This document shows, piece after piece, positions 46,816-49,800 of a stretch of DNA of 64,000 bases (position 1 is the stretch's first letter; each line of letters starts with the position of its first letter). The DNA lies in contig NW_026782269.1 in assembly GCF_031769215.1 (NCBI RefSeq), forward strand, positions 1 through 64,000, written 5' to 3'. Source of the stretch: Ylistrum balloti. Lineage: Eukaryota. A model generated the notes under the pieces. It was not told the origin of the DNA. It saw only the letters and a program-made list of their open reading frames with translations, and ran no database searches. Made by a program: the position numbers and the translations under genes.

Positions 46816-49800
46816 GTAAGTATCCAATTAATGAAAACATGATATTTCTAGCACGTAACCTTCCACGATTACACCTAATTGTCGAAGATATTTCGACTGG
46901 TCGTCCGATTTACACGTTAAGGTATAGATTAAAATAATTTCGATTTATGTATCATACATTGGGACAATTTGTAACCTAAGGATCGGAACTATTGAGACTG
47001 AGTATGGTTGCAGTAATTCCAGCAACAGGCATGAGATCGGATGAGATACTTCCTTAGGTTAGGCATATCAACCCTTCATGGGGCAATAGTCGGGTGTACC
47101 CAATGAAATGTCCTGGGTATCTTTAGCGCCAGACAGTTCATTAAACTGCTGCCTTTCCAGATGGAGTCCACCCTAAGAAGGACCTATAGACTTGGTTCGC
47201 AAGACAACTGAAGCTGGCATTGTTTTGTAAATAGCCATGTTATTTGACTAAACATTAAAAACAGTACTTTTCAGGGTCAGCATATTTCAAAAGTGCCATG
47301 TCATGCCCGAATACATATGCATTTAATATTAATTTCAATCAAATTTACTGAATAAAAACAAATTGAAATGGCCTAAATATGTACATACTCAAATTCAAAT
47401 TAACTGAAGTACAATTTACCAGTTTTTCATAAAATCTTTATATCACTAATTGTCTTATAATTCATGATGAAAAATGGACATATATGCTATGTAATAGAGG
47501 TCATTTTGCCATCTCAATGCCTCCGCTAGGAATCGAACCCGGGACCCCTGGCTTACTAGTCTGACGCTCAACCAATCAAGCTAAAGAGAAGTTCTCTCTA
47601 GCCAAGTGGTATATTGCGGATAGCATTTTACCAGGGTTACATACTCCCCCTCCAGGAAATAACTCGTCCTCGAGTTTCCAGGGGTTACAGCGATGCTGAT
47701 GGGGCATGACTAAGTACTATTCCCAGGTCCCTACATGGGCGCCAGCGTGGGAGAGGTCATTATTTATTTCAATGCTTCCGCTAGGAATCGAACACGGGAC
47801 CCCTGGCTTACTAGTCTGACGCTCAACCAATCGAGCTAAAGAGAAGTTCTCTCTAGCCGAGTGGTATATTGCGGATAGTATTTTACCAGGGTTACATGCT
47901 ATATATATGCCTAGATGTTTCTATGCTTGTAAAATGAAAATTACACTGAAACTGTAAAATTTCTCAAACATGTTTATTGAGGACACAAGATACACGTAGT
48001 TCCTAACAAACTTTTAACACATATATAATATATATTACATGTACAAATAACTACTTGAGAGGTGACAGGTGACACTCGAACTGTACTTATCATTTAGCTG
48101 TGGTCAGTGTCACCAGGTAGATTAGTTAATCTGTAACATATAGAGTTGGGTATGCCCTCAGTAATTGAGTATAGTGTTATCTGTGGACACTGCATCAACT
48201 TAAACAGCATATTTCAATACTCTGTGGTAAGTCAATCAGAACAATTTTTTGCATGTTACTAGACACTGTAGTAAAGTGTATAATACAAAAACAATATAAA
48301 AAAAATATATTGATTAATGAACTGCTGGGCACTTAATGTGTCTCACGCCACTCCCAGGACACTCAATCCTATTAAACTCCATGACAGTTCACTATACTGC
48401 ATTATCATGTGTATACATTATCTTAAAATGTGGATTAAGATATTTTTCAGATGGTCACTCAGAATGATTTTTCACGTGGTGCTAGACATTGGTGTAAAGT
48501 ATATAATACAAAAGGAATTATTAAATGTTATTACTTCTAACTTTGTGTTAAAATAACGTTTTATATCACTAAATTTGTTCTGTACCTAGTACAAAGTGTA
48601 GCCAGTGGCAGAATTTAGTGCAAATGTCAAAGATAGGCCTGAATTTACTTAAGTTCTATTTTTAGCTACAATATAAGCAGTTGATAAAAAAATGGGGGGG
48701 GTGATAAAATTTGTGATTTTCACAAAAAGTGACACAACATAATTAACAACCTTTTGTTTAAAAATGTGTGATAATGCATTGACACATTTTTTGTTTGGAA
48801 ATGTTTAATAGAACTACTTAAAATGACCCTGCATTTGAGTGGCAACTAACTGATTATTCAAAGTGGTAACTATCCCTCAAGTGTAGGGCTATAACACATA
48901 TGAAATGTTGTGCCCAGCCTGTAGATCAACACACTTTTGCTGTTACGACCAAGACTGAAGTACTGGTAAATCTGGCTGTATAGCAAATGTAAACAAATGA
49001 ATCCTGCCTAGTCTTAATTATGGTGTGCATATCAAAATATGGATGGCAAATCTAGTGAGGCGGTGAATCAAACATAGGGCACCTTTTCCACTGAGTTGGT
49101 CGAACTTCATCTGCAATTTAGGTACTTGCATCCCTTTATACTCATCTTCTTTAATTTCACCAAACCTCCTTTGCATAGATAGATCATCTGGAGTGTGTGA
49201 ATGATGCTAAAAAAGAGATTGAACATATATCTATGTACATACAGTAAAGTTGATGTACAGGAGAGGTGTTAGAATAGTTTGAGCTGATTTTGATTTTGAA
49301 GCTGTATGTGGTAGCACTCTCTACTATGGTCGCAGGGAGGACATTCCATTAGACTGTGATTTGGGTAAAGAAGGATGATTTGAAGGCGTAGTTTTTTGCA
49401 GCTATAGATCTGAAATTGAGGTTCTAATGGTGAGATGTAAAATTTCCTAATTTCATTATTAACTACACTGCATATCTTAATTGCTTCTCCCACACATTTC
49501 ACATTCATAGCACAGTACGTTTTTTGCACAAAAACATCCTGCTGAAAGCACACCTGTGGCTTGCATCTTTATTTGTAGACATCACAATGAGTGAATGATG
49601 CCATATTGGATTGGCACACTATAGTGTGTTACTAAAATGTGTACATAGATACTGAAAAATTGCAAAAATGAAATTCCAAGAAATCATCTAAAATTGAGCA
49701 AATATGCAAAAAGTTTGAATTTCACTGACAACCAGAATGTTCCAGGCAACCAGCTTAGCCTACCAAGTTGAAGTGTGTTGTGGTTTTTCCTAATAGATTC

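What the first reader, a model, noticed from the sequence alone, without database searches (positions are those of the whole stretch)
47490..47896. Miniature LTR retrotransposon with a tRNA-derived Pol III promoter inside each LTR (tRNA analogue of Cassandra)
Seen on the minus strand: TGCTA TSD, TG..CA ends, two ~151-bp LTRs 255 bp apart, PBS TGGCGCCCATGTAGGGAC (14/18 identical to the tRNA-Lys PBS TGGCGCCCGAACAGGGAC), PPT GGAGGGGGAG, and no coding capacity. Each LTR holds a tRNA-like block with A box TAGCTCGATTGG (47838-27; variant at 47583-72), B box GTTCGATTCC (47793-84, 47538-29) and a CT-AGT-AA loop, but broken stems. There is no T4 run on the sense strand from the A box to the element end; the first T5 lies in the flank at ~47470-74. 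Established: plant Cassandra TRIMs use 5S rRNA-derived Pol III promoters in their LTRs, and TRIMs have been reported in bivalves. I do not know whether those carry tRNA boxes. Inference: a SINE-LTR chimera transcribed by Pol III and mobilised by an LTR-element RT/integrase.
Basis: partly seen in the sequence, partly recalled or inferred. Interest (0 to 1): 0.78.

Follow-up and report, generated by a model that had tools for sequence, protein, structure and literature searches.

The report
Helenus-type tRNA-bearing miniature LTR retrotransposon
This is an old copy of a 406-base non-coding LTR retrotransposon whose two terminal repeats each hold a worn threonine-tRNA gene; the structure is real, but this kind was published in 2024 as "Helenus", scallops included, so it is ordinary.

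Summary

It belongs to a family with at least several hundred copies in this genome.
- 19 of 22 clean copies have exactly 4-bp TSDs. The window copy has 5 bp.
- The two LTRs show no fixed differences across copies.
- Solo LTRs and LTR-I-LTR-I-LTR tandems exist.
- The PBS is 18/18 complementary to this genome's own tRNA-Lys(UUU)+CCA.
- The LTR block aligns 43/56 to its tRNA-Thr(AGU).

The claimed novelty fails. Kojima 2024 (PMC10886601) named tRNA-bearing TRIMs "Helenus" (TRIMp3). The scallop families Helenus-1_PeMa, Helenus-2_ArIr and Helenus-3_MiYe are clear homologues. This scan also reached the same reading earlier on other DNA of this genome.

Beyond the paper, I found a candidate autonomous partner. 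It is a low-copy Ty3/Gypsy element with open gag and pol frames. It shares the last 8 LTR bases, the 1-nt spacer, the 18-nt PBS and the PPT/LTR junction with Helenus. One old copy appears, by coordinates only, to carry Helenus units between its LTR and leader.

Pol III use remains untested because no RNA runs were available.

The parts
47897..47901 (-). Upstream target-site duplication copy (TAGCA on the minus strand)
   Evidence: It is 5 bp here; the family norm is 4 bp.
47746..47896 (-). 5' LTR (151 nt). It starts TGTAAC. Its end is mutated, reading CCCACG where other copies read GTTACA.
47784..47838 (-). tRNA-Thr(AGU)-derived block of the 5' LTR: A box 47838-47827, anticodon-loop relic CTAGTAA 47814-47808, B box 47793-47784 (with a G>T change just before it at 47794)
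   Evidence: 43/56 identity to the genome's own tRNA-Thr, z about 15. Not called as a tRNA by ARAGORN or the Rfam model.
47727..47744 (-). Primer-binding site, 18 nt
   Evidence: 18/18 complementary to the 3' end plus CCA of tRNA-Lys(UUU) genes of this genome.
47642..47745 (-). Internal region (104 nt including the 1-nt spacer), non-coding. Its last 56 nt differ at 2 positions from Helenus-1_PeMa.
   Evidence: (hand alignment).
47644..47653 (-). Polypurine tract GGAGGGGGAG, followed by TA and the 3' LTR
   Evidence: The PPT/LTR junction 20-mer occurs 152 times in the genome.
47490..47641 (-). 3' LTR (152 nt), TGTAAC...ATTACA
47529..47583 (-). tRNA-Thr-derived block of the 3' LTR: A box variant 47583-47572 (C>T), B box 47538-47529 intact
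47485..47489 (-). Downstream target-site duplication copy (TAGCA)
47470..47474 (-). First T5 run on the sense strand, 16 nt beyond the element. It is a possible Pol III stop for read-through transcripts (inference).
   Evidence: 29 of 30 copies have no T4+ run inside the element.

Best explanation
The element is a decayed copy of a Helenus-type TRIM (TRIMp3 in Kojima's terms). It is a 406-bp non-autonomous LTR retrotransposon. Each 151-nt LTR holds a relic of a tRNA-Thr(AGU) gene that keeps the A and B boxes but has lost the stems.

Most likely life cycle:
1. An RNA starts in the 5' LTR. It is probably made by Pol III from the tRNA boxes, starting about 10 nt upstream of the A box. I put this at about 0.6, and it is inferred.
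2. The RNA runs through the T4-free element and ends at the first T-run in the flank.
3. It is packaged by a Ty3/Gypsy element.
4. tRNA-Lys(UUU) primes minus-strand synthesis at the 18-nt PBS.
5. The PPT primes the plus strand, and both LTRs are regenerated.
6. The integrase inserts the cDNA with a 4-bp staggered cut.

Shown here: the architecture, the TSDs, the PBS-tRNA match, LTR homogenisation, solo and tandem derivatives, and homology to published Helenus families.

Inferred: Pol III use, packaging, and which Gypsy family supplies the proteins. The window copy itself is old and probably inactive.
For: - Family size. There were 2338 first-look candidates, and all scored full-length copies were 91-95% identical to the window copy. 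An LTR 20-mer occurs 268 times exactly and 1205 times with up to 2 mismatches.
- TSDs. Exactly 4 bp in 19/22 copies, against 2/462 in controls.
- LTR behaviour. No column differs in majority base between 5' and 3' LTRs. There are 30 sites where both LTRs of one element share a private base. Two elements have identical LTRs.
- Derivatives. A solo LTR with TSD GTAT. Tandem LTR-I-LTR-I-LTR forms at 4 loci.
- PBS. 18/18 to the genome's own tRNA-Lys(UUU).
- tRNA block. LTR positions 59-113 align 43/56 to the genome's own tRNA-Thr(AGU), with an identical anticodon loop and z about 15. This is better than to Lys, Arg or Gln.
- T runs. No T4+ run in 29/30 copies, nor in the three published scallop consensus sequences (read).
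- Published class and homologues. PMC10886601.
- Candidate partner..
Against: - There is no transcript evidence of any kind. The only public run holding the locus is not on record as RNA.
- The tRNA-like block is not recognised by ARAGORN or by the Rfam tRNA model even at E up to 10. 'tRNA-derived' therefore rests on sequence alignment.
- The window copy has a mutated box in each LTR and a mutated 5' LTR end.
- Absence of T4 runs in about 400 nt has roughly a 0.3 chance for one sequence, and all copies share ancestry.
- The partner is supported only by 27 nt at the LTR end plus PBS, 9-10 nt at the PPT/LTR junction, and one chimera inferred from coordinates.
Confidence: 0.9

Rival explanations
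1. It is the same TRIM, but transcribed by Pol II, either from an LTR promoter or by read-through from host genes. On this view the tRNA relic is a leftover of an old SINE or tRNA insertion, or serves another role such as RNA structure or packaging mimicry.
For: - No RNA data exist here.
- The 57 nt upstream of the A box are about as conserved between scallop species as the boxes themselves (hand alignment).
- Kojima states that promoter function is unvalidated.
Against: - The boxes are kept while the tRNA stems are broken.
- The differences between four scallop families fall on the degenerate positions of the A and B boxes.
- The whole element is free of T4 runs, even in its A/T-rich LTR tails.
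- Cassandra, the 5S analogue, is reported to give Pol III transcripts (stated in PMC10886601).
Confidence: 0.3
2. It is two neighbouring tRNA-derived SINE copies, or a local 255-bp tandem duplication, and not an LTR element.
For: - The repeat unit holds a tRNA-like head, as SINEs do.
- Tandem arrays of the 255-nt unit exist.
Against: - More than 25 independent loci have the same LTR-PBS-PPT-LTR layout with sharp TG..CA ends, and 4-bp TSDs flank the whole unit.
- There is no A-rich or LINE-like tail.
- The PBS matches tRNA-Lys 18/18.
- The two repeats show no fixed differences, as LTR replication predicts.
Confidence: 0.01
3. It is a member of the biv-TRIM family described in bivalves in 2019.
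For: biv-TRIM is also a bivalve TRIM with tandem and solo forms.
Against: - biv-TRIM has 202-218-bp repeats and a 77-80-bp inner domain.
- Its PPT is GGGGAGA, and it has no canonical PBS.
- It has a conserved inner segment TGATCCCAAAGGAC. That segment is absent here even with 4 mismatches.
- All sizes differ.
Confidence: 0.01

Closest known systems
Helenus (TRIMp3), especially Helenus-1_PeMa (Pecten maximus), Helenus-2_ArIr (Argopecten irradians) and Helenus-3_MiYe (Mizuhopecten yessoensis); Kojima 2024, PMC10886601
   Same: - TRIM with a tRNA-like block in each LTR, a tRNA-Thr-like anticodon loop and 4-bp TSDs.
- Same LTR start (TGTAACCCTGG) and end (CTGTTACA).
- The 18-nt PBS is identical to PeMa and ArIr.
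- Same PPT and TA spacer.
- By hand alignment, the window's 3' LTR is 116/128 identical to PeMa over its first 128 nt.
- The last 56 nt of the internal region differ at 2 positions.
   Different: - The LTR is 151 nt rather than 159-160.
- The roughly 25-30 nt LTR tail after the tRNA block and the middle of the internal region do not align.
- No exact 13-17-mer of this family's LTR start or end is in the paper's sequence file. It is therefore a sister family from another scallop genome.
- The paper aligned this PBS group to Aplysia tRNA-Lys-CTT with a gap. Here it fits the genome's own tRNA-Lys(UUU) perfectly.
Cassandra (plant TRIM with a 5S rRNA-derived Pol III promoter in its LTRs)
   Same: Same design: a small-RNA gene relic with an internal Pol III promoter inside each LTR of a non-coding TRIM. 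It also forms tandem arrays.
   Different: Cassandra has a 5S-derived block, not a tRNA-derived one. It is found in plants, has 5-bp TSDs and is 565-860 bp long (as cited in PMC10886601). The two are not homologous.
biv-TRIM (Satovic et al. 2019, PMC6934838)
   Same: A bivalve TRIM with solo and tandem forms.
   Different: It has no tRNA-like block reported, no canonical PBS, longer repeats and a different inner motif.
tRNA-derived SINEs (SINE2)
   Same: A tRNA-derived head with A and B boxes, a short non-coding body, and a probable end at a flanking T-run.
   Different: SINEs are moved by LINE machinery, with variable TSDs and a 3' tail. This element has LTRs, a PBS, a PPT and fixed 4-bp TSDs.

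Membership tests
Helenus (TRIM with tRNA-derived LTR sequence) | TRIM architecture: two short LTRs, with a PBS right after the 5' LTR and a PPT right before the 3' LTR, and no coding capacity | tested here: met
   The same layout is seen in 27 distinct loci.
Helenus (TRIM with tRNA-derived LTR sequence) | tRNA-like sequence in the LTR, with box A (TRGCY...YGG) and box B (GGTTC) kept | tested here: met
   TAGCTCGATTGG and GGTTCGATTCC are present in family copies. The block aligns 43/56 to the genome's own tRNA-Thr(AGU), z about 15. The window copy has one box mutated per LTR.
Helenus (TRIM with tRNA-derived LTR sequence) | 4-bp TSD in animal families | tested here: met
   19/22 copies have exactly 4 bp. 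The window copy is an exception with 5 bp.
Helenus (TRIM with tRNA-derived LTR sequence) | Sequence homology to named Helenus families | tested here: met
   Exact PBS, PPT and LTR-start words were found in Helenus-1_PeMa, Helenus-2_ArIr and Helenus-3_MiYe. The hand alignment gives about 90% over 128 nt of the LTR. I did not run a machine alignment, because that would have meant typing the published sequences.
TRIMp3 (TRIM transcribed by Pol III) | Transcription by RNA polymerase III from the small-RNA-derived promoter | not testable with these tools
   No RNA run holds the locus. Only indirect support exists: boxes kept while stems are lost, and no T4 run.
Cassandra | 5S rRNA-derived sequence in the LTR | tested here: not met
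   There was no 5S match in the Rfam scans. The block is tRNA-Thr-like.
biv-TRIM | 202-218-bp terminal repeats, a 77-80-bp inner domain and the conserved segment TGATCCCAAAGGAC | tested here: not met
Ty3/Gypsy (candidate partner L067, L068) | pol domain order PR-RT-RNaseH-IN, flanked by LTRs, with a PBS and a PPT | tested here: met
   Pfam hits run in that order along the 1445-aa ORF. The 381-aa ORF has a PNMA-type gag domain. The LTRs are 830 bp and 99.7% alike over the 626 nt that could be compared.

The most novel reading that the evidence does not exclude
This may be the first concrete autonomous partner for an animal Helenus. The candidate is a low-copy Ty3/Gypsy family (about 14 LTR hits) with open gag and pol frames. 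It shares with Helenus the last 8 LTR bases, the 1-nt spacer and the 18-nt PBS, which is 27 identical bases in a row, plus the GAGTA|TGTA PPT/LTR junction. In one old Gypsy copy (contig C40), its 5' LTR and PBS are followed, to the base, by a Helenus internal region and LTR. About 1.2 kb further on, CTGTTACAT plus the PBS resumes into the Gypsy leader. This heterologous tandem would be best explained by template switching between co-packaged RNAs.
Probability: 0.45. Interest if true: 0.35.

Novelty: new member of a known kind. Interest (0 to 1): 0.15.

Why it matters
The class is already published, so the finding does not change what is known. It adds one more scallop family to Helenus.

It gives three small refinements:
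- An exact tRNA-Lys(UUU) primer assignment.
- A family-wide absence of Pol III terminators.
- A testable candidate Gypsy partner, with a possible recombinant.

If the partner link holds, this scallop would be a convenient system for asking how a Pol III-made RNA gets into a Gypsy particle. Kojima leaves that question open for all TRIMp3 elements.

Tried and rejected
- ARAGORN on the window and on solo-LTR loci, and the Rfam tRNA model at E up to 10, gave no tRNA call. The weak mir-591 and ZNRD1-AS1 hits are noise.
- Two Helenus-like LTRs 6.1 kb apart on C250 looked like the LTRs of a long element. Self-comparison shows a 6.1-kb tandem segmental duplication that carries one solo or truncated copy. 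I rejected it as a partner.
- The RNA evidence search returned only one run, and it is not on record as RNA. Laying its contigs confirmed both element-flank junctions and showed no empty-site allele. It says nothing on expression. Its summed depth is not a copy number.
- BLAST of Helenus parts against the Gypsy element found nothing above chance except the PBS. There is no shared internal or LTR body.
The C40 chimera and the other two PBS-sharing families (LTR ends GTGTGACA-TT and GGCTACA-TTT) could therefore not be read further. I did not try another tool for it.
- I did not reuse it and do not reproduce it. All later comparisons are between natural copies.
- I did not type the published Helenus sequences into an aligner. 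The identities to them are hand counts.

Full report
**1. Observation**

Read on the minus strand, window 47490-47896 has this layout:
- A 151-nt LTR, 47896-47746, starting TGTAAC.
- One spacer base, then an 18-nt PBS at 47744-47727.
- An internal region of 104 nt counting the spacer, ending in the PPT GGAGGGGGAG (47653-47644) plus TA.
- A second LTR, 47641-47490, ending ATTACA.

The repeat finder reports the two repeats at 255-nt spacing and 95% identity. The flanks carry TAGCA on both sides. No ORF exceeds 43 aa.

**2. A real mobile family**

The whole element finds 2338 first-look candidates in the 648-Mb assembly. All scored full-length copies are 91-95% identical to the window copy. An LTR 20-mer occurs 268 times exactly and 1205 times with up to 2 mismatches. 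The LTR/PBS junction word occurs 97 times and the PPT/LTR junction word 152 times.

In 27 distinct loci the layout LTR-PBS-internal-PPT-LTR is the same, with sharp TGTAAC...GTTACA ends.

- TSDs. Of 22 copies with both flanks readable, 19 have exactly 4-bp TSDs, one (the window) has 5 bp, and two have none. Mismatched flank pairs agree in 2 of 462 cases.
- LTR homogenisation. The two LTRs of an element differ by a median of 3.3% (range 0-9.3%). No alignment column has a different majority base in 5' and 3' LTRs. At 30 sites both LTRs of one element share a private base. That is what LTR replication predicts and what a static tandem duplication does not.
- Derivatives. Solo LTRs exist, one with the TSD GTAT. 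LTR-I-LTR-I-LTR tandems occur at 4 loci.

The 'two adjacent SINEs' rival is refuted.

**3. The window copy is old**

Its LTRs differ by 9.2%. Its 5' LTR end reads CCCACG-C where other copies read GTTACA-T. The 5' LTR B box and the 3' LTR A box each carry a point change. Contigs of the one public run that holds the locus cross both junctions and show no empty site.

**4. Primer**

A pattern built from the PBS complement plus a T-loop found 11 sites in the genome and none in the reversed control. ARAGORN calls tRNA-Lys(UUU) at six of the ten sites that were cut out as loci.

The gene at L034:1449-1521 ends ...GTCCCTACATGGGCG and is followed by a T5. With CCA added, this is complementary to all 18 PBS bases. 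Complementarity stops at base 19.

**5. The tRNA relic**

Real tRNA-Thr(AGU) genes of this genome were fetched. One (L045:1469-1543) aligns to LTR positions 59-113 with 43/56 identities, and the anticodon loop CTAGTAA is identical. The score lies about 15 SD above shuffles and is higher than for Lys, Arg or Gln.

The acceptor and anticodon stems no longer pair. Neither ARAGORN nor the Rfam tRNA model calls the block. So the promoter boxes are kept and the tRNA fold is lost.

**6. What is known**

Kojima 2024 (PMC10886601) defined Helenus as TRIMs with a tRNA-derived sequence in the LTRs, and proposed the name TRIMp3 for TRIMs with a Pol III promoter. The paper reports:
- 51 families in pteriomorph bivalves.
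- 4-bp TSDs in animals.
- tRNA-Thr-like predictions in bivalves.
- tRNA-Lys among the primers.
- Gypsy elements as the inferred helpers.
- An explicit statement that Pol III use is unvalidated.

Its sequence file holds three scallop families with the same LTR start, PPT and spacer: Helenus-1_PeMa, Helenus-2_ArIr and Helenus-3_MiYe. Two of them also have the identical PBS.

By hand alignment:
- The window's 3' LTR is 116/128 identical to Helenus-1_PeMa over its first 128 nt.
- The LTR tails do not align.
- The last 56 nt of the internal region differ at only 2 positions.

This family's own LTR-start and LTR-end words are absent from the file. It is therefore a sister family from another scallop genome, not one of those listed.

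biv-TRIM (PMC6934838) differs in all sizes and lacks a PBS, and its hallmark motif is absent here. No later paper in the library tests Helenus transcription. Earlier agents of this scan reached the same reading on other pieces of this genome.

**7. Pol III**

There is only indirect support.
- The differences between this family and the three published ones in the boxes fall on degenerate positions of the box consensus, while the stems are broken.
- 29 of 30 copies, and the three published consensus sequences, have no T4 run, including their A/T-rich LTR tails.

A Pol III RNA starting upstream of the A box of the 5' LTR would run through the 3' LTR and stop at a flank T-run, which here is T5 at 47474-47470. 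The whole LTR part downstream of the start would then serve as R. This is inference. No RNA run was available.

**8. Candidate partner**

I searched for the PBS with two downstream positions forced to differ from Helenus. This gave 12 sites in a few families. One family (L058, L066) ends its LTR with CCTGTTACA, then T, then the PBS. That is 27 bases in a row identical to Helenus.

The fetched copies (L067, L068) have these features:
- 830-bp LTRs starting TGTAGC.
- A PPT region ending GGGAGGAGTA directly before the LTR.
- A 381-aa ORF with a PNMA-type gag domain.
- A 1445-aa ORF with protease, RT, RNase H and integrase in Ty3/Gypsy order.

Only about 14 LTR hits exist in the genome. Apart from the PBS, no further similarity to Helenus was found. 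Two other families share the PBS but not the LTR end.

**9. A possible recombinant**

On contig C40:
- A Gypsy LTR lies at 90000-90826.
- The alignment to the Gypsy LTR end plus PBS stops exactly at the end of the PBS, at 90845.
- The Helenus PPT/LTR junction word lies at 90922-90941 and the LTR word at 91003. This puts the Helenus LTR start 103 nt after the PBS start, which is exactly the Helenus internal length.
- The Gypsy alignment resumes at 92101, starting with CTGTTACAT plus the PBS, and runs into the leader.
- A second Gypsy LTR follows at 97186.

The unread gap has the length of about four more 255-nt units. This fits a heterologous tandem joined at the shared 27 bases, as template switching between co-packaged RNAs would give. 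It needs the sequence to be read.

**10. Verdict**

Interest is low. The only additions are the exact primer assignment, the terminator-free pattern, and a testable partner with a possible chimera.

I describe the Gypsy copies only.

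Noticed in passing
L053/L054 (G000:C250:684000-701999): A tandem segmental duplication of about 6.1 kb (97% and 92% identical blocks). Each unit carries one Helenus LTR preceded by GGGGAGTA, which is a truncated or solo copy. 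This explains two LTRs 6.1 kb apart.
   Followed up: yes
L031-L040 (G000:C448, C1175, C336, C30): Repeated clusters of tRNA-Lys(UUU), tRNA-Gln(CUG) and tRNA-Gln(UUG) genes. L033 also has an ARAGORN call with anticodon TTA ('tRNA-Stop'), probably a mutated Gln gene.
   Followed up: no
G000:C351:708626-710295: Two LTRs of the Gypsy family face each other and are joined by only TGGCGCCC, the palindromic start of the PBS. Their leaders lie outward at 704295-705436 and 715893-716431. This is an inverted, tail-to-tail pair of unclear origin. It was seen by coordinates only.
   Followed up: partly
L055, L062-L064 (G000:C35, C854) and L056, L057, L060, L061: Two further repeat families carry the same 18-nt tRNA-Lys(UUU) PBS but different LTR ends (GTGTGACA-TT and GGCTACA-TTT). 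The C854 copies lie 5.5-5.9 kb apart in one orientation.
   Followed up: no
G000:C40:90000-98019: An old Gypsy copy that appears to hold Helenus internal and LTR units between its 5' LTR/PBS and its leader. This was inferred from hit coordinates, and the sequence was not read.
   Followed up: partly
L067:2646-3791: The gag-like ORF of the Gypsy element matches Pfam PNMA (PF14893, E 7e-11). This is the domain family of the domesticated Ty3/Gypsy gag genes of vertebrates.
   Followed up: no
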